Shown here piece by piece: positions 31,064-47,871 of a DNA stretch of 64,000 bases. The notes under the pieces were generated by a model that did no database searches, was not told the DNA's origin, and saw nothing but the letters and a program-made list of their open reading frames with translations. The stretch is taken from positions 124,001-188,000 of the IMG/VR virus record IMGVR_UViG_3300023174_002543, one strand, 5' to 3'. A program made the translations under genes and the position numbers. Positions within the stretch are counted from its first letter, which is position 1, and each line of letters opens with the position of its first letter.

Positions 31064-31169
31064 ATAGCATCGAAAGATGCTATTCTAAAACATATTTTAG
31101 TGGAACAACTGGTACTATAACTACCTACCCACACGACTCGGGAGTACTGAATGTGTTTTAGAATAGCAT
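31064..31169 (+). ncRNA. Long-stem clamp element with alternative 5' hairpin
   Basis: 19-bp stem 31077-31095/31151-31169; ATAGCAT at 31064 competes for the same ATGCTAT. Confidence 0.55.
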
Positions 31170-31563: not shown

Positions 31564-31637
31564 GCTCTCATAGTATAAAGGCATTACACTACATTGGTAA
31601 TGTAGAAACACTGGATCGTTACCAGTTGGGAGCACCA
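31564..31637 (+). tRNA. tRNA-Thr(GGT)
   Basis: CTACA-ttGGTaa-TGTAG; T-loop GATCGTT variant; CCA. Confidence 0.9.
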
Positions 31638-31705
31638 TTATAGAAACATACTCTAACTTTATTGTGACACGTGGGTTCATCCATGAAGTATGTTTCTATA
31701 ATGGT
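31634..31705 (+). ncRNA. Clamp hairpin pairing tRNA-Thr ACCA with the 5' end of the next tRNA
   Basis: Perfect 19-bp inverted repeat ACCATTATAGAAACATACT/AGTATGTTTCTATAATGGT. Confidence 0.7.
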
Positions 31706-33846: not shown

Positions 33847-33922
33847 TCCTCGATAGCTCAGTTGGTAGAGTGCCGGACTGTTAATCCGTTGGTCCCTGGT
33901 TCGAGCCCAGGTCGAGGAGCCA
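33847..33922 (+). tRNA. tRNA-Asn(GTT)
   Basis: CGGA-ctGTTaa-TCCG; CCA. Confidence 0.94.
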
Positions 33923-33941
33923 ATTACTCAATGGAGAAATT

Positions 33942-34723: not shown

Positions 34724-34734
34724 AACATATTTAT

Positions 34735-34809
34735 CTGGCGTTCGTTCAACGGATAGGACATCATTCTTCTAAAGTGATTATAGTGGTTCGATTCCACTAC
34801 GCCGGACCA
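34735..34809 (+). tRNA. tRNA-Arg(TCT)
   Basis: TCATT-ctTCTaa-AGTGA; CCA. Confidence 0.92.
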
Positions 34810-34823
34810 ATCATAAATAATTC

Positions 34824-36027: not shown

Positions 36028-36683
36028 ACATTGGGTTTTACGGTCATAGCAATTGTGCATACAGGTCACCGGATAGTTTTTTAGATTTGGTTGCAACACA
36101 TTACAATGGTAAAGTTGTAAACAAGGGATGCAAACAGGGCAGTGAAGAACGTATTCTATTTGAATTAAAGAAAACAAAACATATAGATGTTGCAGTAATT
36201 TTTCACTGCCATCATAATGCATTATTCATTCCCAATAGTGATAGAGATGTACATGCGATAGATGTAACATATAATCGGGCAACTGATTTGTTTCGTACAA
36301 CTCATTTAGATACTGAGTTTGAAAAAGAGAACAGCCCAAAGTTTATCAATTTGTTTAAGAATGATGATAACCTATTGAATGTTATTGATACATATAAGAA
36401 TTATCTATATCATCAGGATCTAGAACTAAACAGATATTACGGTGCTTTAATGCAAATTGACCAATATCTAGCATATAAGAAAATTAAAGCAATTCACGTA
36501 ATAGATAAACGTTGTGCCATACCATTATGGTTCAAGTTTAATGGTTATGTGGATGATACCATAATGCAAATTTGTGAACAAGAGTTGGCAAAAAACCCTT
36601 TCTTTGTGAATTGTGTCAGTAAACACGGTAATGTGTTGATTGCTGATAAAATTATTCAAATAATTGAATCGTATAAATACTAA
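36024..36683 (+). CDS. Hypothetical protein, SGNH-like
   Basis: FYGHSNC, NKGCKQGSEERI; C-terminal GN.LIA. Confidence 0.5.
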   Translation: MNIGFYGHSNCAYRSPDSFLDLVATHYNGKVVNKGCKQGSEERILFELKKTKHIDVAVIFHCHHNALFIPNSDRDVHAIDVTYNRATDLFRTTHLDTEFEKENSPKFINLFKNDDNLLNVIDTYKNYLYHQDLELNRYYGALMQIDQYLAYKKIKAIHVIDKRCAIPLWFKFNGYVDDTIMQICEQELAKNPFFVNCVSKHGNVLIADKIIQIIESYKY

Positions 36684-36684
36684 T

Positions 36685-36758
36685 GCGGTTTGTGGTAGAG
36701 CGGTCTTACGCCTGCGTGAAACACAGGAGACGGAGGTTCGAATCCCCCGGCCGCCCCA
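36685..36758 (+). tRNA. Atypical tRNA-like element (apparent GAA anticodon, C73)
   Basis: T-arm GGAGG-TTCGAAT-CCCCC and CCA end, but irregular acceptor and anticodon arm (G32, C31.A39). Confidence 0.5.
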
Positions 36759-36780
36759 AAAACATGAATTGTGAATAATT

Positions 36781-37203
36781 ATGACTAACTATAAAATATT
36801 TGAATATACCTATGATAAAGATAGTTTATTATCTTTGTATAATTCATTAAAAGATGAAGGTAAATCTAAAGTTGAGTTATGCTTTAATACAGCAGATTTA
36901 ACTGACGTACCGCATGATATCCTCCCTAATATGGATATCTATGAAAGAACATTGGCTATCGGAGAATATGGATTGGCAGAATTATTATCCGATACCGGAT
37001 ATCATGTTAATCCAGGCAATAATGGATTAATAATTTTCCCAGTGTCTGGTGTAATTAATTTTACATTTGAAGATGGAACTAGTATTGATATTACTCAACC
37101 TACATATACAAACGGTAAAGTAAGTCATACATACAGTCCAAAAGACGGTTCTGCTGTTTTCTTTGCTATTAAGATTCCATCTGATGTAGCATGGGAGGAT
37201 TAA
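36781..37203 (+). CDS. Hypothetical protein (degenerate cupin/2OG-like)
   Basis: GYHVN..NNGLIIFPV...HTY. Confidence 0.5.
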   Translation: MTNYKIFEYTYDKDSLLSLYNSLKDEGKSKVELCFNTADLTDVPHDILPNMDIYERTLAIGEYGLAELLSDTGYHVNPGNNGLIIFPVSGVINFTFEDGTSIDITQPTYTNGKVSHTYSPKDGSAVFFAIKIPSDVAWED

Positions 37204-37709
37204 TATTCTACCCGAATATTGATTTTGATTATTCTTACTTAACTCAATTAGTATACACATCAAAACCAATAGAAGGTAGACCCAATCATCATAGATTGGT
37301 AGCAGACGATAATTATCTAGTAAGTATCAGGGAAAGATATAATTTTCTTAGCCCGATATACAATGTGTATGTAATGCCAGATGGGCTACCGGTGCATACA
37401 GACGCCGGAAGAAAATGCACACTAAACATTCCCTTAGTTAATTGTAAAGATACAATAACTATAGTTTACCAATCAATAGATACTGAAACAGTATATGATA
37501 GTAGCAAAGTGGTAAACAAACTTAATTTAACAGAAAATCTAACAGAATTGTATAGATTTGAATTAGATAGACCTATGTTATTCAATACTACTTATCCACA
37601 TGAAGTAGTTACTAATGGTAAAGAAAGAATTTCTATTAGTTGGAGTCTTATGCCAGAGATAACATTTGACGAGGCTGTAGCACTTTTTAATGAGTGTGAG
37701 CAAGACTAG
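37191..37709 (+). CDS. 2OG-Fe(II) dioxygenase-like protein
   Basis: LPVHTD.GR.C.LNIPL...LFNT.YPHEV...RISISW. Confidence 0.65.
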   Translation: MGGLIFYPNIDFDYSYLTQLVYTSKPIEGRPNHHRLVADDNYLVSIRERYNFLSPIYNVYVMPDGLPVHTDAGRKCTLNIPLVNCKDTITIVYQSIDTETVYDSSKVVNKLNLTENLTELYRFELDRPMLFNTTYPHEVVTNGKERISISWSLMPEITFDEAVALFNECEQD

Positions 37710-38382
37710 CAATTACCTTTTTTACATTTGCTGTAGTAAAAGGTATATTAAGAATTAAATGGTGACTGTCGTTAACCCAACTAATGGTGCGATGTGTCAT
37801 ACGTGTGTTAACATAATATAGTTGACCTTGTTGTATATTCATCTTTTTGTCGTCCATTAACCAATCATATTGTAATGGGCCGCAATTGTTTAAAAATGCA
37901 ACTAGCCTAAAACATTCACGTGGCATACTTGGTGCATCACGGTGAGGAACAAAATATCCACCTATGTCACTACGTATAATCATAGAGCGACCAAGAGGTT
38001 GCCATTGTTCCAATACCGAATGTAAACTAGGACAACGATTATATACATCGGTTGGTGTGTTGAATTCTAATTCACTTAATTGACGACCGGCAGCATAACT
38101 TGCTTCGGCAAGGCTTGTATTTTCTTTGTGAGATTTACCGGGCAATGCCATTAATGTCATTGCTTTACGATTGTTGGGTCTATCTGTGCGAGGCAAATAA
38201 TTTACCCAATCATTGTCAAATTGACTAATCTCTTGCATATACTTGCCTGTGTCAATATACATGTTAAGTGGCTCAAAGTTACCTAAGTTAAGTAATGCTA
38301 ATTCATTAGCCATTATTTCGTGTGTAACATTAGTCGGGTCATATTCTTGGGGTCTGCCGCTGATTCCTGGTGGTACAAGCAT
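37687..38382 (-). CDS. Asp/Asn beta-hydroxylase-like 2OG-Fe(II) dioxygenase
   Basis: GGYFVPHRD, YYVNTRMTHRTISW...HLILN. Confidence 0.7.
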   Translation of the reverse strand: MLVPPGISGRPQEYDPTNVTHEIMANELALLNLGNFEPLNMYIDTGKYMQEISQFDNDWVNYLPRTDRPNNRKAMTLMALPGKSHKENTSLAEASYAAGRQLSELEFNTPTDVYNRCPSLHSVLEQWQPLGRSMIIRSDIGGYFVPHRDAPSMPRECFRLVAFLNNCGPLQYDWLMDDKKMNIQQGQLYYVNTRMTHRTISWVNDSHHLILNIPFTTANVKKVIASLAHTH

Positions 38383-38393
38383 TATAATGTTCT

Positions 38394-39050
38394 TTAAATA
38401 TAAGTTATCATTTGATCCATTGTAGGTCTTCTGTTCCTTGTATGGATATTTCTAATTGAAGAATCTAGATTTTTCAGGTCAAACCCAATTTCTATACCGT
38501 CTTTATAAACTTTAGAAATTGGATAATCACTGTGGTCACTGGTTGCGTAACCAAATCCAAGAGTGATGATAGCACTATGTTCTGGTTTGTTTAATCTGTC
38601 AGCAATTTCTCTGCCACCTATACAACCACAAAATCCAGTGCTAACACCTAATTCTTCGGCTTGACACATTGCCATAGTAGCACTAACTATGCAATCATTG
38701 TTAGTACGAAGGAATTCGTTTTCGGTATATGAATTCATTGGTTGATTGAATTGTTTGCCTAGCCAAATCATTACAATGGGTGCAGCCATTTGACCATTAT
38801 ATCTACGTAAACCAGGACCTTGCTTGGCTCTAATCATATCCAAGCAACTAGTATCTTCGTAGTATAACCATTGTTTAAACTCTTTGCCAGCAGGACTATC
38901 AGTAAGCACTATAATTTCATAGTCATAGTGACCTTGTTTGCTTGGTGCAAGATATGCACATTCAAGGATAGCATTAATTTTTTCGTTTTCTACAGTTTGG
39001 TCATTCCACCATTTTGCTGTATAACGGGTTCGCAAATAATCTAATAACAT
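38394..39050 (-). CDS. Nitroreductase-family protein
   Basis: RTRYTAKWW...ILECAYLAPSKQG; MCQAEELGVSTGFCG. Start moved to the ATG at 39050, 5 nt after TATAAATA. Confidence 0.8.
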   Translation of the reverse strand: MLLDYLRTRYTAKWWNDQTVENEKINAILECAYLAPSKQGHYDYEIIVLTDSPAGKEFKQWLYYEDTSCLDMIRAKQGPGLRRYNGQMAAPIVMIWLGKQFNQPMNSYTENEFLRTNNDCIVSATMAMCQAEELGVSTGFCGCIGGREIADRLNKPEHSAIITLGFGYATSDHSDYPISKVYKDGIEIGFDLKNLDSSIRNIHTRNRRPTMDQMITYI

Positions 39051-39091
39051 AGAAATATTTATACGTTTAAATGCCCATGAGAAACAATTAG

Positions 39092-39246
39092 TGTTGTTTT
39101 TTTGCAACAAACAGTTTGACAAGATATCCAACTTAGTATATAATTCATTTATGAATTGAGAAATTGATTCGCTGGGTGAATTGAAGAATTTGTTGTAATA
39201 ATACAACACAAAAAGATTTGACAATAAATCCAATTAGATGTATAAT
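39092..39246 (+). promoter_or_regulatory. Tandem duplicated sigma70 promoters, each preceded by TGTTG-N8-CAACA
   Basis: TTGACA 39116/TATAAT 39139 and TTGACA 39218/TATAAT 39241. Confidence 0.8.
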
Positions 39247-39296
39247 ACATTTAATGAGTTGAGAAATCAACATGTTCTTTAAAAAGTTAATTTTTC

Positions 39297-39559
39297 ATAT
39301 AGCCCTGTTTAAGTTACAGGGACTATATGCAAACACATTGGGTTACCTTCCCAGTAGGTAACTTAGATAGTGAGTAACCAGTTGACGGACTGGCACTTCT
39401 GAGTTACACGAAACCTTGAGACTATTAGTTATAGTAGTCAGGAGGACGCTGGAACAAGTTGGCACGTAATGTGGTTGACAAACAAGTCCGTGGACGGCAC
39501 GGTAGGGCAGGATCAAAACTGTTATTTTTGTCAAACACCCCAATGTCTTTTCATATAGT
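39297..39559 (+). ncRNA. Candidate multi-branch ncRNA closed by a clamp stem
   Basis: 18/20-bp stem 39322-39341/39540-39559; competing 5' hairpin 39297-39328; several inner hairpins. Confidence 0.6.
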
Positions 39560-39560
39560 G

Positions 39561-39689
39561 TGTTATTAGTTCTATCCTCTGTAAGCACAGAGGCAAACTA
39601 GATGCGTTATGTAACCTATCCGATAAACAGTAATCGGCCGTAAAGCTGTTGAGGGTAGGCAAATAGTGCAGTGGATAGAACTAATAATA
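39561..39689 (+). ncRNA. Candidate ncRNA with H-type pseudoknot
   Basis: Perfect 15-bp closing stem 39563-39577/39673-39687; CCGAT/ATCGG hairpin whose loop AACAG pairs with CTGTT. Confidence 0.6.
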
Positions 39690-39692
39690 TTT

Positions 39693-39769
39693 GCACCGTT
39701 AGCGCAGTTGGTTAGCGCACCGCCCTGTCACGGCGGGGGTCAGGGGTTCGAGTCCCCTACGGTGCGCCA
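39693..39769 (+). tRNA. tRNA-Asp(GTC)
   Basis: CCGCC-ctGTCac-GGCGG; CCA. Confidence 0.95.
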
Positions 39770-39776
39770 AGTTTTT

Positions 39777-39852
39777 GCTGGGTTCGTCTATCGGTTTAGG
39801 ACACATGCCTTTCACGTATGTAAGACGGGTTCGATTCCCGTACCCAGTACCA
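39777..39852 (+). tRNA. tRNA-Glu(TTC)
   Basis: CATGC-ctTTCac-GTATG; CCA. Confidence 0.93.
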
Positions 39853-39858
39853 AGTTTT

Positions 39859-39943
39859 GGAGATGTAGGAAAATTGGTAACCCCAGGAGACTGTAAATCT
39901 TCCGCCTCTGGCACTGTTGGTTCAACTCCAACCGTCTCCACCA
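39859..39943 (+). tRNA. tRNA-Tyr(GTA)
   Basis: AGA-ctGTAaa-TCT; long V-arm; CCA. Confidence 0.92.
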
Positions 39944-39964
39944 GAAACATGTTAGTAAAGAATT

Positions 39965-40825
39965 TGGGGGCATAGCCTCTTTAAGATAAGTCACGTGAGT
40001 GACCCAAAGCAGTATCCTCCTACAGGACTGCGCCAGTAATGGTCTATCTATGCAAGCCTGCTCTCACCCGCGAGGGTGCGTTCACTGATAAGACCGGTGG
40101 ATGTAACAGTAAAGCAAGTGTGTTGGAAAGAATGTCTGTTTATGTTCCCGTGAGGGTAAGACAGGCGGACAGAGAGTAACAGGTGGTGCTGACCTCAACA
40201 CAAAACCAACTTGTCAATTGGTAAGAGAAAGGGTAGTGTATTGATTCGAAGGGTCGCTCCTAAGAGTTCGTATGCAGTTTGAGTGTTTGATGGATATGTA
40301 GTAATACATATACATTGGTCGCAAAAAACTACTGATTACTCCGCGAGAGGAAAGGTACGTGGCGTGTTGTATTTTGTAGTCCAAAAGATTATGAAGCAAC
40401 TGAGACAGCACATCACAGTAGGTTGTTATAGGCTAATGGTAGGCCGATTTCCTTTTAAGAAATAGACTGTTGGTTCAACTCCAACTAACATTATAAAAAC
40501 GCAAAGTCTGTCTCGGTGGTATGTGAAAAACATCTAATACTTGAGTGGCAACACAATCAAGTCTGACGTAACTCGCAAGGTGAAATCAGTTTATGCAGGA
40601 AGTATCGTAACTACTTAGCGGTAGTGAATGGCTCTAAAGGTCAACGGTGTAGAAAGCGTAGAATAGCATATCATGTCAAGTCTAATGCCTGACTTAAAAC
40701 GGCGATGTTGGTAACAGACTAGGATATGTAGTAATACAGTCTTAGTGGAAATCAGAAGAAAGTAGGCTCGCAAGGCTTACAATAATGTCTGAGGTGTTAC
40801 TCGGTAAGCATGTATTCTCAGTGCT
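39965..40825 (+). ncRNA. Large ornate ncRNA, GOLLD-like (about 860 nt); boundaries approximate
   Basis: Long non-coding stretch inside the tRNA array with many GNRA-capped hairpins (ccc-GCGA-ggg, ccc-GTGA-ggg, gctc-GCAA-ggc, atatgta-GTAA-tacatat). Size and context match GOLLD; not tested against Rfam. Confidence 0.6.
40422..40493 (+). tRNA. CCA-less tRNA-Lys(TTT) embedded in the large ncRNA
   Basis: GGCT-aatggta-GGCC D-arm; ATTTC-ctTTTaa-GAAAT; GTTGG-ttcaact-CCAAC; weak acceptor; no CCA. Confidence 0.75.
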
Positions 40826-40829
40826 CCAC

Positions 40830-40930
40830 TTTATATAAAAACATACTGGACGCCACACAACGGCGGTCTAGCGTCAACTAGGCGATGTTACGTTTGACGA
40901 TGTAACAGATTTAGTGTGTTTCTATATAAA
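40830..40930 (+). ncRNA. Clamp element enclosing three hairpins (four-way junction)
   Basis: 17/18-bp stem 40830-40847/40913-40930; inner GACGCC/GGCGGTC, CTAG/CTAG, TGTTAC/GTAACA. Confidence 0.6.
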
Positions 40931-40934
40931 GGTT

Positions 40935-41147
40935 TTGTAAGTGTCAGCAAGAGAATGTCACGCTATAAAAGTTTCTTCGAAGGACTGATATAGTAAAAGG
41001 GGACGGGTTCAACTCCCGGTGGATCGGAAGATCCGCGCAGATTGGTTGCTAACTGGACTAGTATCCCAAGTGACGTACCGAGTCCTGGCCCGGGCTTTAT
41101 GCAAATCAGGTGAATGGTGTCAATAACGATGGTGGCACAACTTACAA
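40935..41147 (+). ncRNA. Candidate structured ncRNA (about 210 nt)
   Basis: Closing TTGTAAG-TGTC/GGCAC-aa-CTTACAA; T-loop-like GGG-TTCAACT-CCC; GGATC-ggaa-GATCC. Confidence 0.55.
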
Positions 41148-41156
41148 ATTTAATAT

Positions 41157-41244
41157 GGAGTATTGGCCGACCGGTTAAGGCAACGGATTGCTAATCCGTC
41201 GTTCAGAAATGGGCGAGTAGGTTCGATTCCTACATACTCCGCCA
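41157..41244 (+). tRNA. tRNA-Ser(GCT)
   Basis: ACGGA-ttGCTaa-TCCGT; long V-arm; CCA. Confidence 0.94.
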
Positions 41245-41266
41245 AAACGTTCCGTTGTCAACGGAT

Positions 41267-41504
41267 ACTCTGACCCAGAGGATGAGAAGTGATGTGACAA
41301 TCACGGGTGGTTCTGAAACGGAAAAGTTTCACACAGAAGCCATGATTGAACATGGATGTATGTGCGGTCTAACCAAACCGGCGTTAGCAATACGAGAACG
41401 GTCCCTGTCGGGAAGCGGGTGGAGGTCGTGCGTGATGTTGTCGTGGATTATTCGTCTAGTCCGATGATTGATGCGATATAATTACCGCCGAGGGATGTCA
41501 GAGC
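41267..41504 (+). ncRNA. Candidate structured ncRNA (about 240 nt)
   Basis: Closing CTCTGAC/GTCAGAG; inner GGTTCTG/CAGAAGCC, GAAAC/GTTTC, CGGT/ACCG, CGTT/AACG, TCCC/GGGA. Confidence 0.55.
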
Positions 41505-41512
41505 ATTTATAT

Positions 41513-41590
41513 GTAGGAGTGGCAGAGCGGCCCATTGCAACGGATTGCAAATCCGTAAAACCGTGAGTTCAAATCTCACCTCCTACTCCA
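41513..41590 (+). tRNA. tRNA-Cys(GCA)
   Basis: ACGGA-ttGCAaa-TCCGT; U73; CCA. Confidence 0.92.
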
Positions 41591-41609
41591 AATATTGAAA
41601 GGAAATGTA

Positions 41610-41990
41610 ATGTATTATGATTATGAATCGTCTGCTAAGTTAACAGACATGGTAGGTAAAGTGTTTACCTCAGTTAAAGAAACTGGTGATACTATGGTGT
41701 TTGAAAATGCAACTGACCGTTATGTTTTCTTTCACTCACAAGATTGTTGCGAATCAGTTAGCATCAATGATATAGTAGGTGATTTGTCTGACCTAGTAGG
41801 GGAACCTCTATTAGTGGCAGATGAAGTGTCTGGAGAAGCTCCGGTTGGATTTGAAGATGAATATCACGAATCAGTAACTTGGACATTTTACAAATTTGCT
41901 ACTCGCAAAGGGTATGTGGATGTACGATGGCTAGGTGAATCTAATGGGTACTATAGCGAAAGCGTAGACCTAGGTTACGAAAAAGTTTAA
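41610..41990 (+). CDS. Hypothetical protein
   Basis: GAAAGGA RBS; HSQDCCESV, WTFYKFAT.KG...RW.GESNGYYSE. Confidence 0.8.
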   Translation: MYYDYESSAKLTDMVGKVFTSVKETGDTMVFENATDRYVFFHSQDCCESVSINDIVGDLSDLVGEPLLVADEVSGEAPVGFEDEYHESVTWTFYKFATRKGYVDVRWLGESNGYYSESVDLGYEKV

Positions 41991-42004
41991 CAAAAGGAAA
42001 TGAC

Positions 42005-42061
42005 ATGAAACGAGGTAAGAAATAGTGTCATCATAGACTTCCGTAGGTCTATGATTGGCAC
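42005..42061 (+). other. Minigene MKRGKK-stop followed by a 14-bp hairpin
   Basis: AAAGGA RBS; ATG 42005; TAG 42023-42025; GTGTCA-TCATAGAC/GTCTATGA-t-TGGCAC. Confidence 0.45.
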
Positions 42062-42084
42062 GTAAAATCAATCATACGACTTAT

Positions 42085-42161
42085 GGAAGCATAACTCAAC
42101 TGGCTAGAGTATCGGACTTTTAATCCGAGAGTTGTGGGTTCGAGTCCCACTGCTTCTACCA
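42085..42161 (+). tRNA. tRNA-Lys(TTT)
   Basis: TCGGA-ctTTTaa-TCCGA; CCA. Confidence 0.94.
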
Positions 42162-42239
42162 TATAAGAACATACTGCCTTCTGGTGAGTAAGATAACAAT
42201 GCTTACAATAAAAGTCCAAGTAGTGTGTTCCTATATGGT
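42158..42239 (+). ncRNA. Clamp hairpin sequestering tRNA-Lys ACCA
   Basis: 17/18-bp ACCATATAAGAACATACT/AGTGTGTTCCTATATGGT. Confidence 0.65.
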
Positions 42240-42251
42240 ATAAATATTTTT

Positions 42252-42473
42252 ATGATAAATGAATTTAAATTTTTATTCACAAATAAAGAAGAATATCATC
42301 GTAGGTATGATATTTGCAAAAGTTGTGATAGGTTCAATAGCTTAACCAAGCAATGTAAAGAATGTAATTGCTTTATGCCAATGAAATGTAAGATAAGCAA
42401 TTTGCCCTGCCCCTTAGGCTATTGGGCTAATGCAATAGATGTATCTGAAACAGATAATTTAGAAACGTTATAA
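42252..42473 (+). CDS. Small Cys-rich metal-binding protein (DUF6171-like)
   Basis: R...CKSC......QCKECNCFM..K......CP...W; TATAAATA 5 nt upstream. Confidence 0.75.
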   Translation: MINEFKFLFTNKEEYHRRYDICKSCDRFNSLTKQCKECNCFMPMKCKISNLPCPLGYWANAIDVSETDNLETL

Positions 42474-42475
42474 AA

Positions 42476-42549
42476 GTCTCCTTGGTGTAACGGCAGCATG
42501 ATGGTCTCCAAAACCATTCGTGGGGGTTCAAATCCCTCAGGGGACGCCA
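42476..42549 (+). tRNA. tRNA-Trp(CCA)
   Basis: ATGGT-ctCCAaa-ACCAT; CCA. Confidence 0.93.
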
Positions 42550-42551
42550 AA

Positions 42552-42752
42552 TTATTTTCTAAACTCAAGTTCCTTGAGTTTTTTGATTACTAAATCAAAA
42601 GTATGTGAATCATTTAATGATAGACTAGCAATTAGGGCAAGAAGGATACCCTGTTCATACAACAGTTGTTGTTCTCTTGTATTAAAATTCTTTTTATTAG
42701 AAATATATACAAGATGTTCTCGCAGGCGTTCTGCTATTTTTAATGGATCCAT
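42552..42752 (-). CDS. Small antisense hypothetical protein within the tRNA array
   Basis: Minus-strand TATAAATA 4 nt upstream of the ATG. Confidence 0.65.
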   Translation of the reverse strand: MDPLKIAERLREHLVYISNKKNFNTREQQLLYEQGILLALIASLSLNDSHTFDLVIKKLKELEFRK

Positions 42753-42765
42753 ATATTATTTATAA

Positions 42766-42842
42766 GCCTCAATAGCTCATTTGGTTAGAGCACCGTCTTG
42801 ATAAGGCGGGGGTGCCTAGTTCGAATCTAGGTTGAGGCACCA
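42766..42842 (+). tRNA. tRNA-Ile(GAT)
   Basis: CCGTC-ttGATaa-GGCGG; CCA. Confidence 0.94.
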
Positions 42843-42848
42843 GAATAT

Positions 42849-42877
42849 TTGACAAGTACTAACTAGTGCTATATAAT
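42849..42877 (+). promoter_or_regulatory. Sigma70 promoter
   Basis: TTGACA-17-TATAAT. Confidence 0.8.
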
Positions 42878-42888
42878 AGAGACATGTT

Positions 42889-42965
<77 letters not shown>

Positions 42966-42982
42966 CCTAATAAGAAAGTATC

Positions 42983-43399
42983 ATGGATTTAACAAAAGAA
43001 GACGGCGACAAACGCAATAGTTTACCTTATCCAATGGAGTTAGGTAGTCCTGCATTTGCACCCATCGATGTTAAAAAAGAAAGTGATGTGTTATACAATG
43101 CTGGCAAATTACATGCCAAGCAAGAGTATGATAGAATCATGGAACAAGTAGAAGTTCTAAGACGCCAAGCAGAAAGTTTGGAGCATAGAATGCAAGTAAG
43201 TGACATGATGCATAATATTACTATTACCTTTAAGCCGGTGCATGGTAAGATTTATTATGTGTATTTGGATACACTTAAAAATAAACACTGGCTTTCACTG
43301 AACCATCCTAATAGTTGGTCAGCACTAGGTATACATCATAAATTTGTAGTTGCTGTCCAACTAATGGGTGATAGTAATTGGCAAAAAGTAGAAATTTAA
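42983..43399 (+). CDS. DUF2452-like hypothetical protein
   Basis: PYP.ELGSPAF; coiled coil AKQEYDRI.EQ; FKPVHGKIYYVY. Confidence 0.7.
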   Translation: MDLTKEDGDKRNSLPYPMELGSPAFAPIDVKKESDVLYNAGKLHAKQEYDRIMEQVEVLRRQAESLEHRMQVSDMMHNITITFKPVHGKIYYVYLDTLKNKHWLSLNHPNSWSALGIHHKFVVAVQLMGDSNWQKVEI

Positions 43400-43400
43400 T

Positions 43401-43474
43401 GCGGGGTTAGTTTAATGGTAAAACAGCAGATTTCCAATCTTCGGTCGAGAGTTCGATTCTCTCACTCCGCTCCA
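43401..43474 (+). tRNA. tRNA-Gly(TCC)
   Basis: Loop ttTCCaa; U73; CCA. Confidence 0.9.
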
Positions 43475-43670
43475 ATCAATAGGAATATTATTTATGAATA
43501 TGAAAATTACATACGACAATCCTGATAACTTACAAGAAGACAGTACTCCTATACCGGAGGACGCTAAAAAAGGTCTTGCAATTCCATTTCATGTTCAGAT
43601 TGGACTACAAGAATCAATACCGGTATCAATAAGTACTACTCAAGTTCCAATAGAACCAAGTGAGAAATAG

Positions 43671-43910
43671 TTGACAGACTACATAACAACATTTTTTGCA
43701 ATCTTTTTACTTGATATTGTTTACACATACTACTTAAGATGTGTGGCAAATGATAACGTGTTAGGTGCAAGTTTTTGGAGTGTAGCCTGTTATATCTTAG
43801 GAAGTGTGGCAGTTATAAATTACACAACCAATCATTGGTTAATGATTCCAGCAATGGCTGGTGCGTTTTGTGGCACCTTTATTGGAATGAAGATTAGAAA
43901 GAAAGATTGA
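43671..43910 (+). CDS. Small membrane protein
   Basis: Three hydrophobic segments; TTG start. Confidence 0.65.
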   Translation: MTDYITTFFAIFLLDIVYTYYLRCVANDNVLGASFWSVACYILGSVAVINYTTNHWLMIPAMAGAFCGTFIGMKIRKKD

Positions 43911-43912
43911 TT

Positions 43913-43996
43913 GCCCCGGTGGTGGAATGGTAGACACGTTGGTCTTAGAAGCCAATGTCGAAAGGCGTGCGAGTTCGAGTCTCGCCTGGGGCACCA
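43913..43996 (+). tRNA. tRNA-Leu(TAG)
   Basis: TTGGT-ctTAGaa-GCCAA; long V-arm; CCA. Confidence 0.94.
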
Positions 43997-44000
43997 AATT

Positions 44001-44084
44001 GCGAGAGTGGTGGAATGGTATACACAGCAGACTTAAAATCTGCCGCCGAAGGGCTTACGGGTTCGAGTCCCGTCTCTCGTACCA
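44001..44084 (+). tRNA. tRNA-Leu(TAA)
   Basis: GCAGA-ctTAAaa-TCTGC; long V-arm; CCA. Confidence 0.94.
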
Positions 44085-44189
44085 TTATAGAGTACAGGCT
44101 CTTTATAAATCCTGTCTTTGCGTGGAACCGAGCAACGCTACTGCTTGTATAAGCATCGGTTCATATTACTACTATAGATAAATAGTAGT

Positions 44190-44366
44190 ATGAAATTCAA
44201 TATATTCATCAATAATAAACTATATAAAACAGTTACCGTTCAGGGCGACACTTTTAATCCTACTTCAATTTGGCCTCAAATTGAAGCCGATAAAAAATCC
44301 GGACTATTAAGTAGTTACAATGTCAGCGAACAACTGTCTATCAAAGTAGAAAAAGTCAAAAATTAA
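44190..44366 (+). CDS. Small hypothetical protein, 58 aa (not in ORF track)
   Basis: TAAATA 5 nt upstream; MKFNIFINNKLYKTV. Confidence 0.55.
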   Translation: MKFNIFINNKLYKTVTVQGDTFNPTSIWPQIEADKKSGLLSSYNVSEQLSIKVEKVKN

Positions 44367-44369
44367 TCT

Positions 44370-44444
44370 ACATGATTAACTCAGTGGTAGAGTCCTGTCC
44401 TGACTCGACAGTGGTCAATAGTTCGAATCTATTATCATGTACCA
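44370..44444 (+). tRNA. tRNA-Val(GAC) with unusual U37
   Basis: CTGTC-ctGACtc-GACAG; ACATGAT/ATCATGT; CCA. Confidence 0.85.
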
Positions 44445-44494
44445 AAACACTTGCAAGTATTTTAAATCAGTGCTATACTTGCGTATAAATATTT

Positions 44495-44569
44495 CGTGGG
44501 GTGGAGAAGTAGTATCTCACTAGTCTCATAAGCTAGAGAACGGCGGTGCGATTCCGTCCCCCGCAACCA
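44495..44569 (+). tRNA. Initiator-like tRNA-Met(CAT)
   Basis: C1.A72 mismatch; loop ctCATaa; lacks the three G-C anticodon-stem pairs; CCA. Confidence 0.75.
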
Positions 44570-44587
44570 AACAACTAAAGGAAAATA

Positions 44588-44857
44588 ATGAAAGTAAGAG
44601 CAAGACATATTTTAGTACCGACGCTTAATGAAGCAGTTGAAGTCTTTAACAAGATTAAAGAAGGTGAAGATTTTGGTGCTGTAGCACGTAAAATGTCAAA
44701 GTGTCCTAGTGGTCAAAATGGTGGCGACTTGGGTGAGTTTGGTCACGGTCAAATGGTTAAGCCTTTTGAAGATGCCTCATTCGGGTTAGAGGTAGGTCAA
44801 CTGAGCGAACCTGTTCAAACACAGTTCGGTTATCATTTAATTCAACGTACAGGATAA
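44588..44857 (+). CDS. ppiC: Parvulin-type peptidyl-prolyl cis-trans isomerase
   Basis: ARHILV, SKCPSGQNGGDLGEF..GQMVKPFEDA, PVQTQFGYHLI. Confidence 0.95.
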   Translation: MKVRARHILVPTLNEAVEVFNKIKEGEDFGAVARKMSKCPSGQNGGDLGEFGHGQMVKPFEDASFGLEVGQLSEPVQTQFGYHLIQRTG

Positions 44858-44859
44858 TT

Positions 44860-45021
44860 ATGACTTGTAGGGGATATGATTCTAAAACCGTTAAAATCGG
44901 CAAAGATGTGAAACGTGCCGCGGCATTAATTCATGACCAACATAAACGCGGTGAGTTCATTCGCAGTTTTGTAAAAATTGCACAGAGTGAATCACGTACT
45001 GGTCGTAAAGACAGCAAGTAA
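44860..45021 (+). CDS. Small basic hypothetical protein, 53 aa (not in ORF track)
   Basis: MTCRGYDSKTVKIGKDVKRAAALI...; coupled to ppiC. Confidence 0.6.
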   Translation: MTCRGYDSKTVKIGKDVKRAAALIHDQHKRGEFIRSFVKIAQSESRTGRKDSK

Positions 45022-45041
45022 TATTTCTTAGAAAGATTATC

Positions 45042-45226
45042 ATGCAAATTAGAGTTAAAGAAAATGTAGAAGACTTTGGCAAATGCGGTTGCGGTCGTAG
45101 TCCAATTGGTAAATGCATTGGCTGGCATTAGGATTAACTGAAGAAGCATTTCGTCATGCACAAATGCTTTGGATGGAAGAAGAATTACGTAAAGATGCAG
45201 AAATTGAAAATCTAAACAAAGAATAA
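45042..45226 (+). pseudogene. Frameshifted CDGSH-like Fe-S/Zn finger gene
   Basis: CGCGRSP.GKCIGWH then TAG at 45129; a plausible continuation GLTEEAF...NKE lies in another frame to 45226. Confidence 0.55.
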
Positions 45227-45227
45227 C

Positions 45228-45303
45228 GCATCCTTAACTCAGTTGGTAGAGTGTCGCCTTTACACGGCGAATGTCGGCGGTTCGAGCCCGTCAGGATGTA
45301 CCA
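45228..45303 (+). tRNA. tRNA-Val(TAC)
   Basis: TCGCC-ttTACac-GGCGA; CCA. Confidence 0.94.
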
Positions 45304-45318
45304 GAATAAATACACATT

Positions 45319-45504
45319 ATGAACAACGAAAATCAAAATAAATTATCTGACGAAGTTATCACATGCGTTACCTTTCTAGTTGACGATAGTGATAATGATA
45401 GTGTACAATCTGAATCTACACTAGTAGGACTTGATACTAAGCGCAAGCCTACTAATGTTAGTCAACCCGGTAAACATGTAAATGTCATCAGTGAAAAAGT
45501 TTAA
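45319..45504 (+). CDS. Hypothetical protein
   Basis: 61-aa ORF between tRNAs. Confidence 0.5.
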   Translation: MNNENQNKLSDEVITCVTFLVDDSDNDSVQSESTLVGLDTKRKPTNVSQPGKHVNVISEKV

Positions 45505-45505
45505 T

Positions 45506-45579
45506 GCGGGATTAGTTTAATGGTCAAACGAAACCTTGCCAAGGTTTAGTCAGGAGTTCGATTCTCCTATCCCGCTCCA
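45506..45579 (+). tRNA. tRNA-Gly(GCC)
   Basis: AAACC-ttGCCaa-GGTTT; CCA. Confidence 0.94.
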
Positions 45580-45599
45580 AATAACAACGAAAGAAAATT

Positions 45600-45848
45600 A
45601 TGCCAAGACAATGTAGTGAAGCCGCAGTACAATCAGTAGGTAATCGTTATGACTTAGTTCTTATTGCAAGTGCAAGAGTAAGAGAACTAGTAAGAGGTGA
45701 TATGCCTAAGTTAACAACAACGGCTAAACCCAGTGTTACTGCATTACTTGAAATTGAAAATGGTTTAGTTGGACGTGAGTATCTTAAGAAAATTAAAGAT
45801 GAACCACGCAAAGAACGTAAGTACGACAAGTACGATAGTAGATATTAA
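45600..45848 (+). CDS. rpoZ: RNA polymerase omega subunit homolog
   Basis: VGNRYDLVLIASARVREL..G..P......KPSVTALLEIE.GLVG matches the RpoZ pattern. Confidence 0.85.
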   Translation: MPRQCSEAAVQSVGNRYDLVLIASARVRELVRGDMPKLTTTAKPSVTALLEIENGLVGREYLKKIKDEPRKERKYDKYDSRY

Positions 45849-45854
45849 AAATTT

Positions 45855-45930
45855 GGGGGTGTAGCTCACCAGGGAGAGCGGTTCCTTTGCAAGGAATAGG
45901 TAGCGGGTTCGAGTCCTGTCACCTCCACCA
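45855..45930 (+). tRNA. tRNA-Ala(TGC), second copy
   Basis: G3.U70; GTTCC-ttTGCaa-GGAAT; CCA. Confidence 0.93.
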
Positions 45931-45936
45931 AGATAA

Positions 45937-46028
45937 GGAAGCGTGGCCGAGCCCGGTTTAAGGTACCTGACTTGAAATCAGACGAGGGGGCAACCTCTCC
46001 GTGAGTTCGAATCTCACCGCTTCCGCCA
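45937..46028 (+). tRNA. tRNA-Ser(TGA), canonical 7/5
   Basis: CTGA-ctTGAaa-TCAG; long V-arm; CCA. Confidence 0.93.
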
Positions 46029-46032
46029 AGTA

Positions 46033-46069
46033 ATGGTCATAGTATTAATTTACTATGACCATTTTTTTT
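46033..46069 (+). terminator. Intrinsic terminator ending the tRNA array
   Basis: ATGGTCATAGTA/TACTATGACCAT followed by T7. Confidence 0.9.
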
Positions 46070-46143
46070 GTCCCTATTACCTTGACAATAACATAATTGG
46101 GTTTTTGACATTGACCTAACTATGTAGATAAATATTATAATGG

Positions 46144-46305
46144 TTTTATAAGTGTTCTATATTGCACCCTGCTGATAAGACAGGCCCTGTTTGTGAAAAA
46201 GATATTAGAATACTTATAAAAACACCCTAGCCAAACATTGCAAACATTTGAGTTTACATACTCCTAGTTCTTTAATACTTTTTAGCGCATCTAGGGTGTT
46301 TTTAT
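46144..46305 (+). ncRNA. Two overlapping, mutually exclusive long stems
   Basis: 16 bp 46144-46159/46206-46221 and perfect 15 bp 46216-46230/46291-46305 share ATAAAA; TAAATA at 46129. Confidence 0.5.
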
Positions 46306-46311
46306 TTGCGC

Positions 46312-46340
46312 TTGACAATAATTCCCAAATCACGTATAAT
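46312..46340 (+). promoter_or_regulatory. Sigma70 early promoter
   Basis: TTGACA-17-TATAAT. Confidence 0.85.
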
Positions 46341-46362
46341 ACTCACAATGAAGGAGAATAGT

Positions 46363-46857
46363 ATGCCATGGATTCAAAACGTAGCACTTAGTGATATCAA
46401 AAAAGGGTTTCATATTGACCCCGGACCCAACAACCTGTTGATTCAGATTGTTGATACAGGTATGGAATTTCCTGAACCAAAATATAAATTCAATAGTGTG
46501 CATCAATTTCAATTTTTAGATTTGGAAAAGAATGATTTGTGCATTGAACCAGAAATGAAAATCAGTGACGACCAAGCAAATAGTTTGGTAATACTACTAA
46601 AGCAAGCATTGCTTAATCGTAGTAATGTAATTGTGCATTGTGTTGCAGGTGTGTGTCGTAGCGGTGCAGTATGCGAAGTTGGTGTAATGATGGGTTTTGA
46701 TGACACAGAAGTTTTTCGTAGCCCTAACTTGTTAGTGAAACACAAAATGATGAAAGTGTTGGGTTTAACTTATGATGAGAATGAACCTCATACTATCAAT
46801 GGTATAACATTAGATTCTGGGCTAATTGTGCCTAAGAATTATGAAGGTGATATATGA
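46363..46857 (+). CDS. Protein tyrosine/dual-specificity phosphatase-like protein
   Basis: VHCVAGVCRSGA (CX5R); AAGGAG RBS before the ATG at 46363. Confidence 0.85.
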   Translation: MPWIQNVALSDIKKGFHIDPGPNNLLIQIVDTGMEFPEPKYKFNSVHQFQFLDLEKNDLCIEPEMKISDDQANSLVILLKQALLNRSNVIVHCVAGVCRSGAVCEVGVMMGFDDTEVFRSPNLLVKHKMMKVLGLTYDENEPHTINGITLDSGLIVPKNYEGDI

Positions 46858-47171
46858 AAGTATTGCGTAAGTTAGTACGTGATGGGCATGTTGCAATACT
46901 AATCAGTTCTGATTATGGTAGTGGTTGGTATAGTTGGAATCCTGACTATCCTGAAATACTTTTTGATCCGGCAATGATTAGACTTGTAGAGGAAAATAAA
47001 TTTGATGAATTAGAAATTTATGTTACACTGAAGTATCCAGAAATACATAAACATGCATTACGTGATTTAGAAGTTGAGTGGGTACGTGAGGGTGCAGAGT
47101 TTCGCATTAAAGAACATGATGGTGCTGAAACTATTGAATTTAAAGATGAAGTAGATTGGATTGTAGCATGA
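46854..47171 (+). CDS. Hypothetical protein
   Basis: SSDYGSGWYSWN; FRIKEHDGAE. Confidence 0.75.
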   Translation: MKVLRKLVRDGHVAILISSDYGSGWYSWNPDYPEILFDPAMIRLVEENKFDELEIYVTLKYPEIHKHALRDLEVEWVREGAEFRIKEHDGAETIEFKDEVDWIVA

Positions 47172-47401
47172 CATATATTGTAGAACACAACGAATTTGAA
47201 AAAGAATTCGTATCACTTGACATGGCAATGGACTATGCTAAGACATTAGATGTGTTTGTTGTCATTAAAGGTGACGATGGGTTAGAGATTGCAGGTAAGT
47301 TTGGTGTTGATAGCGTTGAGAACGGCAAAACACCCGATGGCATTGCATATACATGGAATAAAGAAAGTCGTATTGGTCGAGTACAGAAGGAGCGGTCATG
47401 A
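47168..47401 (+). CDS. Hypothetical protein
   Basis: ATGA-coupled ORF. Confidence 0.7.
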   Translation: MTYIVEHNEFEKEFVSLDMAMDYAKTLDVFVVIKGDDGLEIAGKFGVDSVENGKTPDGIAYTWNKESRIGRVQKERS

Positions 47402-47871
47402 ACAAGTGTTATCAGTTAATAGGTGTGCCTGGTGCAGGTAAAAGTACTTGGTATAAAAATCAAGACTGGCTAGGCAAGGATAAAAAGGATCACAAGTATG
47501 TTTCTACTGACCAGCATGTTGAAGGATATGCTCAGGATCAAGGTAAGACCTACCGTGAAGTCTTTGAAGAATACATGCCTATTGCTATTAAGCAAATGAT
47601 GGTCAATGTTAACATGGCTTCGGCAATGCGATTGGACATTGTTTGGGATCAAACTAGTACTACATTAAAAAGTCGTACTCGCAAGTTTAATGCTTTACCG
47701 GACTATGACCATGTTGCTGTTGTATTTTCTACGCCCGATTTAAAAGAATTAAAACGTAGATTAAACAGTCGTCCAGGTAAAGTTATTCCTTGGGAAGTAG
47801 TACAGGGTATGATTGACAATTGGGAAGAGCCTACCCTTGAAGAAGGCTTTAAAGAAATTTGGAGAGTATAA
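47398..47871 (+). CDS. P-loop kinase, polynucleotide kinase-like (AAA_33)
   Basis: LIGVPGAGKSTW, VSTD, VWDQT, R...R. Confidence 0.85.
   Translation: MNKCYQLIGVPGAGKSTWYKNQDWLGKDKKDHKYVSTDQHVEGYAQDQGKTYREVFEEYMPIAIKQMMVNVNMASAMRLDIVWDQTSTTLKSRTRKFNALPDYDHVAVVFSTPDLKELKRRLNSRPGKVIPWEVVQGMIDNWEEPTLEEGFKEIWRV

What the first reader, a model, noticed from the sequence alone, without database searches (positions are those of the whole stretch)
42158..42246. Second ACCA-sequestering clamp, overlapping a late promoter
Seen: the trailer of tRNA-Lys pairs 17/18 bp starting at the tRNA's ACCA, as at 31634, and its 3' end overlaps TATAAATA (42239-42246). Independent recurrence on a different tRNA argues against chance. 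A weaker version follows tRNA-Leu(TAA) (44085-44177: TTATAG-AGTA/TACT-A-CTATAG with inner AACCGA/TCGGTT and TGCTT/AAGCA).
Basis: seen in the sequence. Interest (0 to 1): 0.6.

Follow-up and report, generated by a model that had tools for sequence, protein, structure and literature searches.

The report
Conserved hairpin capping phage tRNA ends
The hairpin after tRNA-Lys is real: it is one copy of a conserved family of about 20-base-pair RNA stems that begin exactly at the ACCA 3' end of certain tRNAs (and after a GOLLD RNA) in uncultured freshwater giant phages, most likely as processing signals in tRNA transcripts, while its overlap with a late-promoter motif is a local accident.

Summary
Bases 42158-42177 pair with 42220-42239, starting at the ACCA of tRNA-Lys(TTT), with one A.C mismatch (MFE -28.8 kcal/mol, z -5.7). 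No clamp this good appeared in 9,900 trailer shuffles.

It is not an independent recurrence. The hairpins at 31634, 40830, 42158 and 31079 are sequence paralogs ("class A").

Real independent support comes from related uncultured freshwater phage contigs:
- About 40 of 518 tRNA 3' contexts carry 18-23 bp stems anchored on the discriminator.
- These fall into at least four unrelated stem sequences, all starting ACCAU and ending AUGGU.
- Covariation is strong, and orientation always matches tRNA transcription.
- Orthologs of this trailer keep the TGGT.

At least 119 IMG/VR contigs carry class A. In 60 of 73 distinct copies a tRNA ends exactly at the CCA, mostly Lys, Gln or Glu. In 28 the stem's last bases are the first bases of the next tRNA. 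One copy also directly follows a GOLLD RNA.

The TATAAATA overlap recurs only in one close relative. The tRNA-Leu(TAA) "weaker version" is not supported.

Best reading: spacer hairpins in stable-RNA operons that serve as double-strand (RNase III-type) processing sites. This is inferred, not shown. No Rfam family matches. T4 and KVP40 lack such clamps.

The parts
42085..42161 (+). tRNA-Lys(TTT) with encoded CCA. The discriminator A73 and CCA (42158-42161) form the first four pairs of the hairpin.
   Evidence: ARAGORN; Rfam tRNA 69.8 bits; joint fold.
42158..42177 (+). 5' arm of the class A hairpin. It starts at the discriminator and has the conserved A of the A.C mismatch at position 9 (42166).
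   Evidence: CM R1, 67 bits.
42178..42219 (+). Variable interior ('cargo') with a small inner stem-loop (42184-42190 / 42200-42206). It is 91% identical to the interior in L034, but is replaced by unrelated sequence in the close relatives L001 and L002.
42220..42239 (+). 3' arm, ending in TGGT that pairs with ACCA.
42239..42246 (+). TATAAATA (T4-type late-promoter motif). It shares one base with the stem and lies 5 nt before the ATG at 42252. It is not a conserved part of the hairpin family.
42252..42473 (+). 73-aa Cys-rich ORF with no Shine-Dalgarno sequence. It is an inserted cargo gene between the hairpin and tRNA-Trp: absent in L001 and replaced by another ORF in L002.
   Evidence: (weak DUF6171 match).
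31634..31705 (+). Paralogous class A hairpin (perfect 19-bp stem) bridging tRNA-Thr(GGT) and tRNA-Met. ACCA pairs with TGGT, and the GGT is nt 1-3 of tRNA-Met.
   Evidence: 44 bits; z -5.8.
40830..40930 (+). Paralogous class A hairpin starting a few nt after the 3' end of the GOLLD RNA. It has the same A.C and U.G positions.
   Evidence: 52 bits; z -7.0. The same arrangement is in L002.
31079..31167 (+). Diverged class A-like hairpin (21 bp) in the leader of the first tRNA operon.
   Evidence: 31.4 bits, E 1e-5; z -6.0.
40359..40824 (+). GOLLD RNA (conserved domain) with tRNA-Lys 40422-40493 embedded. It is the upstream neighbour of hairpin copy 3.
   Evidence: Rfam RF02032, 201 bits.
39558..39692 (+). 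Another long hairpin (not class A). It ends 1 nt before the 5' end of tRNA-Asp.
   Evidence: z -6.1.
39116..39246 (+). Two perfect sigma-70-type promoters (TTGACA-17-TATAAT) upstream of the Asp...GOLLD...Lys stretch, on the same strand as the tRNAs. They are consistent with the hairpins being transcribed, but read-through to 42158 was not shown.
46032..46063 (+). Intrinsic-terminator-like hairpin with a T-run after the last tRNA. It contrasts with the class A hairpins, which lack a T-run.

Best explanation
The feature is one copy of a conserved family of plus-strand RNA hairpins. Each has an AU-rich stem of 18-23 bp (median 21) around a variable interior of 28-129 nt. They sit as spacers in the stable-RNA (tRNA and GOLLD) region of a group of uncultured freshwater jumbo phages.

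The stem is built flush against the preceding stable RNA. After a tRNA, its first four pairs use the discriminator and CCA. Its last bases are often the first bases of the next tRNA.

The most likely function is punctuation of the polycistronic transcript. A host double-strand-specific endonuclease (RNase III type) would cut the two-turn helix. That would leave a short single-stranded 3' trailer on the upstream tRNA, to be trimmed back to CCA by exonucleases. It would also leave a short 5' leader on whatever follows, to be removed by RNase P when that is a tRNA.

Shown: the structure, its conservation, covariation, register and orientation. Inferred: transcription through the hairpin, the identity of the nuclease, and the order of cuts.

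The overlap with TATAAATA and the small ORF behind it result from a gene insertion at the hairpin's 3' edge in this lineage.
For: Structure:
- Fold z is -5.7 to -7.0 for the four window copies.
- No shuffle in 9,900 reaches the observed clamp scores.

Family:
- CM R1 finds four copies in the 64-kb window, all inside the tRNA region. It finds about 45 in 58 related loci.
- At least 119 IMG/VR contigs match a strict class A pattern.

Register:
- Clamp scores across 518 tRNA 3' contexts are bimodal.
- In 60 of 73 distinct class A copies a tRNA ends exactly at the CCA. In 28 of 73 the next tRNA starts inside the last 2-3 stem bases.

Covariation:
- Class A is 97% paired, with 8 of 17 pairs changed on both sides and 0 of 500 shuffles as good.
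- The unrelated C/D family after tRNA-Glu shows compensatory changes in 10 of 20 closing pairs, while ACCA:UGGU stays fixed.

RNA level and strand:
- C/U toggling opposite a fixed G gives 41 G.U against 6 A.C outside the fixed mismatch (with an ascertainment caveat).
- Inverted-orientation arms occur 0-1 times against 20-22 forward.
- The plus strand outscores the minus strand for every CM hit.

Ruler-like length: stems are 18-23 bp with a mode of 21 and 33% GC, across unrelated sequences.

Context:
- Sigma-70 promoters lie on the same strand, and a separate true terminator follows the array.
- The phage encodes no RNase III or CCA-adding enzyme, so host enzymes must act.
Against: - There is no direct evidence of cleavage. 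The metatranscriptome contigs barely cover 42061-42257 and cannot show RNA ends.
- Only about 8% of tRNA contexts have a clamp, and these are concentrated on Lys(TTT), Gln(TTG) and Glu(TTC). So the hairpin is not a general requirement for 3' maturation.
- The conserved A.C mismatch and the strong sequence conservation of the class A arms suggest sequence-specific recognition that plain RNase III cutting does not need.
- The hairpin is far more conserved than its flanks (91-100% against 67-68%) and marks homology breakpoints. That also fits a recombining or mobile cassette.
- The host, and therefore its RNase repertoire, is unknown.
Confidence: 0.45

Rival explanations
1. Regulatory CCA clamp. 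Pairing A73-C74-C75-A76 with UGGU keeps the precursor inert. It blocks aminoacylation, the RCCA contact with the RNase P RNA P15 loop, 3' exonucleases, or host toxins that attack CCA ends, until the trailer is removed. This would impose order or timing on the maturation of particular tRNAs.
For: - ACCA:UGGU is the most invariant part of stems whose remaining sequence is unrelated.
- TGGT is kept even when no tRNA follows.
- Clamps are concentrated on three tRNAs, Lys, Gln and Glu.
- When the upstream RNA is not a tRNA, the base pairs change on both sides rather than staying TGGT (columns 4-5).
Against: - Copies after GOLLD and other non-tRNA RNAs do not pair a CCA.
- After tRNA-Gln the discriminator G is often opposite A (position 1).
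- A four-pair clamp does not explain a conserved 21-bp stem length.
- No experiment bears on the timing of maturation.
Confidence: 0.2
2. 3' stabiliser. The hairpin acts as a barrier to 3'-to-5' exonucleases and protects the upstream tRNA, GOLLD RNA or mRNA. This would resemble REP elements, the hairpins left by RNase III on T7 early mRNAs, or chloroplast 3' inverted repeats.
For: - The hairpins sit immediately 3' of stable RNAs, without a T-run.
- About half have no tRNA downstream.
Against: - A barrier that includes the CCA would leave the tRNA unusable unless it is also cut. So an endonuclease step is still needed.
- The AU-rich, ruler-like 21-bp stems are unlike typical short GC-rich barriers.
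Confidence: 0.15
3. DNA-level cassette. The element is a selfish or recombinogenic palindrome, in the manner of a PeSL, MITE, REP or attC site. Its conserved arms mediate exchange of the interior and of neighbouring genes between co-infecting phages, and any RNA role is secondary.
For: - The hairpin is 91-100% identical between phages whose adjacent tRNA-Lys and DUF7448 gene are only 67-68% identical.
- The same interior follows tRNA-Lys in one phage and tRNA-Gln in another.
- The window, L001 and L002 have 93-95% identical flanks but three different interiors. Homology breaks inside the arms and resumes at the 3' arm.
Against: - There is only one orientation relative to transcription.
- Copies are confined to stable-RNA arrays.
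- The genome has no tyrosine recombinase or Y1 transposase.
- No target-site duplication is seen.
- Unrelated stems share the exact discriminator register and covary.
- There is a G.U bias on the transcribed strand.
Confidence: 0.15
4. Promoter-linked hairpin. The stem exists to regulate the overlapping TATAAATA late promoter or the leaderless ORF behind it.
For: - TATAAATA shares a base with the stem and lies 5 nt before the ATG.
- The same TATAAATA-N5-ATG module follows the hairpin in L002.
- The motif is rare in the genome (34 copies), and 8 of 34 have an ATG 3-5 nt downstream.
Against: - Only 1 of 73 other class A hairpins has TATAAATA within 40 nt, and none has it flush.
- Orthologs in L001 and L034 are followed by a spacer or by tRNA-Met.
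Confidence: 0.03

Closest known systems
RNase III processing stems (E. coli rRNA operon stems flanking 16S/23S; phage T7 early-region sites such as R1.1)
   Same: - Long, AU-rich double-stranded stems of about two helical turns sit between functional RNAs in a polycistronic transcript.
- Internal mismatches are conserved.
- The stems enclose or abut the RNAs to be released. This description of the known sites is from established knowledge; the geometry here is.
   Different: - Here the stem is anchored on the tRNA discriminator and CCA, and often on the first bases of the next tRNA.
- Cleavage has not been shown.
- The class A arms are conserved in sequence far more than RNase III would require.
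Theta (HDV-like) ribozymes at phage tRNA 3' ends (PMC10879173)
   Same: A cis-acting structured RNA is placed within about 1 nt of the 3' end of phage tRNAs and is proposed to process the 3' trailer.
   Different: - The element here has no HDV fold or conserved catalytic core: it is a plain stem with a variable interior and has no Rfam hit.
- The tRNAs here encode CCA (32 of 33), whereas only 4.5% of theta-associated tRNAs do.
- The phages here are from freshwater, not the gut, and no CCA-adding enzyme gene is present.
PeSL composite stem-loop/promoter cassettes of T4-type phages (PMC2839356, PMC4122927)
   Same: Short conserved stem-loop motifs mark the boundaries of indels and gene replacements between close relatives. 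In this copy a promoter motif abuts the stem.
   Different: - PeSLs are described as terminator plus early-promoter composites between ORFs in hyperplastic regions.
- Here there is no sigma-70 promoter in the element.
- The stems are 20 bp with large interiors and are tied to the 3' ends of tRNA and GOLLD RNAs.
- The late-promoter overlap is not conserved.
T4 stable RNAs C and D (species 1 and 2) following tRNA-Arg
   Same: Small non-tRNA RNAs are encoded directly after a tRNA in a phage tRNA cluster. rnaD starts 1 nt after the tRNA-Arg CCA.
   Different: The T4 and KVP40 clusters show no discriminator-anchored long stem (best clamp score 11 or less). There is no sequence similarity.
tRNA-spacer-derived small RNAs in E. 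coli (3'ETS of the leuZ operon); chloroplast and REP 3' inverted repeats
   Same: Functional or stabilising RNA elements are carried in tRNA trailers or at RNA 3' ends (established knowledge).
   Different: Those elements do not pair with the CCA end and have no conserved 21-bp handle or exchangeable interior.

Membership tests
RNase III substrate (processing stem) | Continuous dsRNA of about two helical turns (about 20-22 bp) | tested here: met
   Stems are 18-23 bp with a mode of 21 and at most one internal mismatch. The window copy is 20 positions long.
RNase III substrate (processing stem) | Staggered cleavage by RNase III in vivo or in vitro | not testable with these tools
   Only contig-level RNA data were available, with almost no cover at 42061-42257.
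RNase III substrate (processing stem) | Lies inside a transcript, between RNAs that must be separated | tested here: inconclusive
   The strand is the same as all 33 tRNAs, sigma-70 promoters lie upstream, and the terminator comes only after the array. Read-through transcription was not shown.
Theta/HDV-like ribozyme | Nested double-pseudoknot HDV fold with a conserved core | tested here: not met
   There is no ribozyme hit at E<=1 in 30000-47500. The interiors of family members are unrelated.
Theta/HDV-like ribozyme | Element starts within about 1 nt of a tRNA 3' end | tested here: met
   In 60 of 73 copies a tRNA ends exactly at the CCA that forms stem pairs 2-4.
PeSL cassette | Composite of a stem-loop terminator and an early sigma-70 promoter | tested here: not met
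   No sigma-70 site lies in or next to the hairpins, and there is no T-run.
PeSL cassette | Marks indel or replacement boundaries between close relatives | tested here: met
   Homology with L001 and L002 breaks at 42171-42173 and resumes at 42221.
Intrinsic terminator | Short GC-rich stem followed by a T-run | tested here: not met
   The stem is 33% GC with a 28-129 nt interior and no T-run. The scan lists 46032-46063 but none of the class A copies.
MITE / REP-type mobile palindrome | Copies in both orientations, dispersed in the genome, with a cognate transposase or RAYT | tested here: not met
   There is a single orientation, copies lie only in the tRNA region, and no Y1 transposase or tyrosine recombinase is present.
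T4-type late promoter | TATAAATA at about -10 of a late transcript; a gp55-type sigma factor in the phage | tested here: inconclusive
   The motif is present at 42239-42246. It is rare genome-wide, and in 8 of its 34 copies an ATG opening an ORF of 45 aa or more lies 3-5 nt downstream. The sigma factor and the transcription start were not tested.
Any Rfam 15 family | Covariance-model match | tested here: not met
   There is no hit at 42158-42239, 31634-31705 or 40830-40930 at E<=1, and none on the C/D-type element in L022.

The most novel reading that the evidence does not exclude
The hairpins are an RNA cassette system. A conserved 20-bp 'handle' is docked on the 3' end of particular phage tRNAs (Lys, Gln, Glu) and of GOLLD. 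It presents exchangeable 30-130-nt cargo RNAs, which host RNase III and RNase P excise from the tRNA transcript as small RNAs, for example sponges, decoys or regulators acting on the host. The cargoes are swapped between phages by recombination in the handle. Pairing with the CCA would couple release of the cargo to maturation of the tRNA.
Probability: 0.15. Interest if true: 0.8.

Novelty: new variant of a known kind. Interest (0 to 1): 0.6.

Why it matters
How phage tRNA arrays are matured, especially at the 3' end, is poorly understood. The only described cis element at phage tRNA 3' ends is the theta ribozyme of gut phages.

This is a different, ribozyme-free solution. It is widespread in freshwater jumbo phages and has an exact, testable geometry: the stem starts at the discriminator and often ends inside the next tRNA. 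It is also linked to GOLLD, a very abundant RNA of unknown function.

The result gives a defined substrate set for testing RNase III, RNase P and RNase E interplay on CCA-encoding precursors. The conserved arms are also useful landmarks for gene shuffling in these genomes.

Tried and rejected
- Close DNA relatives among cultured phages: none beyond tRNA-only hits. The hairpin itself has no match.
- Rfam: no family matches on any hairpin.
- Self-cleaving ribozyme: rejected, because there is no hit and the interiors are unrelated.
- Intrinsic terminator: rejected.
- Phage-encoded RNase III or CCA-adding enzyme: none found.
- attC, REP or MITE reading: no integrase or Y1 transposase is present, and there is only one orientation.
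- RNA evidence: four freshwater RNA runs were laid on 39500-45400 (5,901 letters, within the operators' limit). Contigs cover GOLLD and 40879-41469 massively but hardly touch 42061-42257, and contigs cannot show ends. This gives no information on processing.
- G.U versus A.C counts under a symmetric selection rule were swamped by spurious stems. Only the core-stem count is used, with that caveat.
- T4 and KVP40 tRNA clusters: no clamps.
- Folding of 40934-41156 and 41245-41512: weak z-scores.
- No alternative genetic code was used.

Full report
**What is there**

The window is bases 124001-188000 of a single 367,104-bp viral contig that CheckV rates as complete. All 33 of its tRNA genes lie on the plus strand between 31234 and 46028. 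Small ORFs and non-coding stretches are interspersed among them.

tRNA-Lys(TTT) occupies 42085-42161 and encodes its CCA. From the discriminator A42158 onward, the trailer forms a long stem with 42220-42239. The hairpin folds at -28.8 kcal/mol against -13.0 for shuffles (z -5.7). It forms next to an intact cloverleaf with no unpaired base in between. T42239 is also the first base of TATAAATA (42239-42246), and an ATG opening a 73-codon Cys-rich ORF follows 5 nt later.

In 9,900 shuffles of the 33 trailers, no discriminator-anchored clamp reached the observed scores of 16 (Lys) and 19 (Thr).

**It is a sequence family, not an independent recurrence**

The arms at 31634 and 42158 are nearly the same sequence. 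A third copy lies at 40830-40930, and a diverged fourth at 31079-31167. A covariance model built from 29 copies (A1, R1) scores these four at 67, 52, 44 and 31 bits. It finds nothing comparable elsewhere in the 64 kb. All four have fold z-scores of -5.8 or lower.

Copy 3 does not follow a free tRNA. It starts a few bases after the end of a GOLLD RNA (RF02032, 201 bits, 40359-40824), which carries an embedded tRNA-Lys. The same GOLLD-then-hairpin arrangement occurs in locus L002.

The proposed weaker version after tRNA-Leu(TAA) does not hold up. Its z-score is -1.24, and the MFE fold uses other pairings. It does share its first 11 bases with copy 1 and may be a relic.

**Comparative evidence**

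Homologs of the neighbouring DUF7448 gene retrieved 80 IMG/VR loci out of 358 hits. Most carry large tRNA arrays.

I scored every tRNA 3' end for a stem starting at the discriminator. Of 518 distinct contexts, the bulk score 2-8, and about 40 score 12-21.

The high scorers fall into several unrelated stem sequences:
- Class A is the one in this window. It follows Lys(TTT) and Gln(TTG), and occasionally Glu, Thr(GGT) and Leu(TAG).
- Classes B, C and D mostly follow Glu(TTC).

All of them begin ACCAU and end AUGGU.

Orthologs of the window's tRNA-Lys trailer (L001, L002, L034 and others) keep the TGGT.

Among 73 distinct copies from that scan:
- 60 have a tRNA ending exactly at the CCA: 41 Lys, 11 Gln, 2 Glu, 2 Thr(GGT) and 4 others.
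- 28 have the next tRNA starting inside the last two or three stem bases: 15 tRNA-Met.

T4 and KVP40 tRNA clusters show nothing similar. No cultured phage matched the hairpin.

**Is it an RNA structure?**

- On class A, 97% of cells are paired and 8 of 17 pairs show changes on both sides. No shuffle out of 500 matches this.
- Where the upstream RNA is not a tRNA, the base pairs that would be CC:GG change together to other pairs (columns 4-5).
- The C/D elements are homologous cargo RNAs of about 110-130 nt, closed by stems of different sequence. Ten of the 20 closing pairs carry compensatory changes, while ACCA:UGGU is invariant. Inner helices covary too.
- In core stem positions, G.U pairs outnumber A.C by 41 to 6, apart from one fixed A.C. 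This comes mainly from C/U toggling opposite a fixed G, as expected for RNA read from the plus strand. The selection rule favours G.U, so this is supportive rather than decisive.
- The asymmetric arms occur 20-22 times in the forward orientation and 0-1 times inverted. All 784 tRNAs are on the same strand.
- Every covariance-model hit scores higher on the tRNA strand, including hits that were not in the training set.

**Mechanism**

Stems are 18-23 bp (mode 21) and 33% GC, and they enclose 28-129 nt. They have no T-run. The array has its own terminator at 46032-46063 and perfect sigma-70 promoters on the same strand.

A two-turn AU-rich helix, placed exactly between RNAs that must be separated, is what RNase III substrates look like. 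The phage has no RNase III or CCA-adding enzyme of its own.

I therefore favour host RNase III cutting the stem. The freed short trailer would then be trimmed by exonucleases, and RNase P would remove the leader of the next tRNA. This is inference. The only RNA data, freshwater metatranscriptome contigs, hardly cover the hairpin and cannot show ends.

Several points are not explained by simple RNase III punctuation:
- the conserved A.C mismatch at stem position 9;
- the strong sequence conservation of the class A arms;
- the preference for Lys, Gln and Glu tRNAs.

These keep the CCA-clamp idea, a stabiliser role and a protein-binding role open.

**DNA-level behaviour**

The hairpin is far better conserved than its surroundings. 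Between the window and L034 the arms and interior are 91-100% identical, while tRNA-Lys and the DUF7448 gene are 67-68% identical. Identical interiors follow Lys in one phage and Gln in another.

The window, L001 and L002 share 93-95% identical flanks but carry three different interiors at the same site. Homology breaks at 42171-42173 and resumes at 42221 in L002.

The arms therefore act as exchange points, as PeSL motifs do in T4-type phages. However, there is a single orientation, copies are confined to RNA arrays, and no recombinase is present. I rank a purely selfish-DNA reading below an RNA function.

**The promoter overlap**

TATAAATA is rare in this genome: 34 copies, against a median of 61 for composition-matched octamers. 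In 8 of the 34, an ATG opening an ORF lies 3-5 nt downstream. It is therefore plausibly a real signal, perhaps for leaderless late mRNAs.

L002 has the same 3'-arm-TATAAATA-N5-ATG module in front of a different ORF. But only 1 of 73 other class A copies has the motif within 40 nt, and none has it flush. In L001 the ORF is absent, and in L034 tRNA-Met follows directly. The overlap is thus a lineage-specific gene insertion at the edge of the hairpin, not part of the element.

**Comparison and novelty**

The nearest described things are:
- RNase III processing stems of rRNA operons and T7;
- theta ribozymes at phage tRNA 3' ends;
- PeSL cassettes;
- the T4 stable RNAs that follow tRNA-Arg.

None has the defining geometry seen here. 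No Rfam family matches, and my literature searches found no description. I rate it a new variant of a known kind: a cis-acting spacer or trailer element in stable-RNA operons.

Noticed in passing
window 39944-40824: A GOLLD RNA (Rfam 201 bits at 40359-40824) has tRNA-Lys(TTT) 40422-40493 embedded. This tRNA has no encoded CCA. Freshwater metatranscriptome contigs pile up on 39894-40681, with word depth up to about 115,000.
   Followed up: partly
window 40934-41156: A non-coding stretch lies between hairpin copy 3 and tRNA-Ser. It has no Rfam hit and only a weak fold signal (z -2.0). Yet it has very high contig depth (15,000-98,000) in three RNA runs. It may be an unknown abundant RNA, or part of a longer GOLLD transcript.
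   Followed up: partly
window 42239-42254, 44177-44192; L002:4647-4665: There is a TATAAATA (or GATAAATA) - 5 nt - ATG arrangement without a Shine-Dalgarno sequence. The motif is rare (34 per 367 kb), and 8 of 34 have an ATG 3-5 nt downstream. This suggests leaderless late mRNAs.
   Followed up: partly
window 39558-39692: A 135-nt hairpin with a stem of about 24 pairs (z -6.1) ends 1 nt before the 5' end of tRNA-Asp. It lies downstream of two perfect sigma-70 promoters (39116, 39218). It is not class A.
   Followed up: partly
L022:3394-3544, L017:3377-3527, L034:4889-5039, L019:2200-2368, L078:405-573: A conserved structured RNA of about 110-130 nt, with several covarying helices, is enclosed by the discriminator-anchored stem after tRNA-Glu or tRNA-Leu in related phages. 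It has no Rfam match.
   Followed up: partly
window 32644-32735 and 32458-32545: A 92-nt 'tRNA-Ile(TAT)' with a long extra arm scores as tRNA-Sec-like in Rfam (32.6 bits). A second weak Sec-like hit lies nearby. The 92-nt Ile(TAT) recurs in many related loci.
   Followed up: no
window 33137-33697, 34133-34723(-), 44588-44857, 45600-45848, 46306-46857: Several genes are scattered in or next to the tRNA array: an HNH endonuclease, a DnaJ-domain protein, a parvulin PPIase, an RNA polymerase omega-like protein, and a dual-specificity-phosphatase-like protein.
   Followed up: partly
window 2-14410: A single open reading frame of about 4,800 codons runs off the 5' end of the window.
   Followed up: no
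L011:1491-1910: A related phage contig carries a betaproteobacterial-type (two-piece) tmRNA. This hints at the host group.
   Followed up: no
L045:6018-7333, L060:5809-8161: Runs of three to five class A hairpins are separated by 50-110 nt. Some follow CCA-less tRNA-like sequences or a conserved non-tRNA motif (AATGGTCACACGCCCTTG).
   Followed up: no
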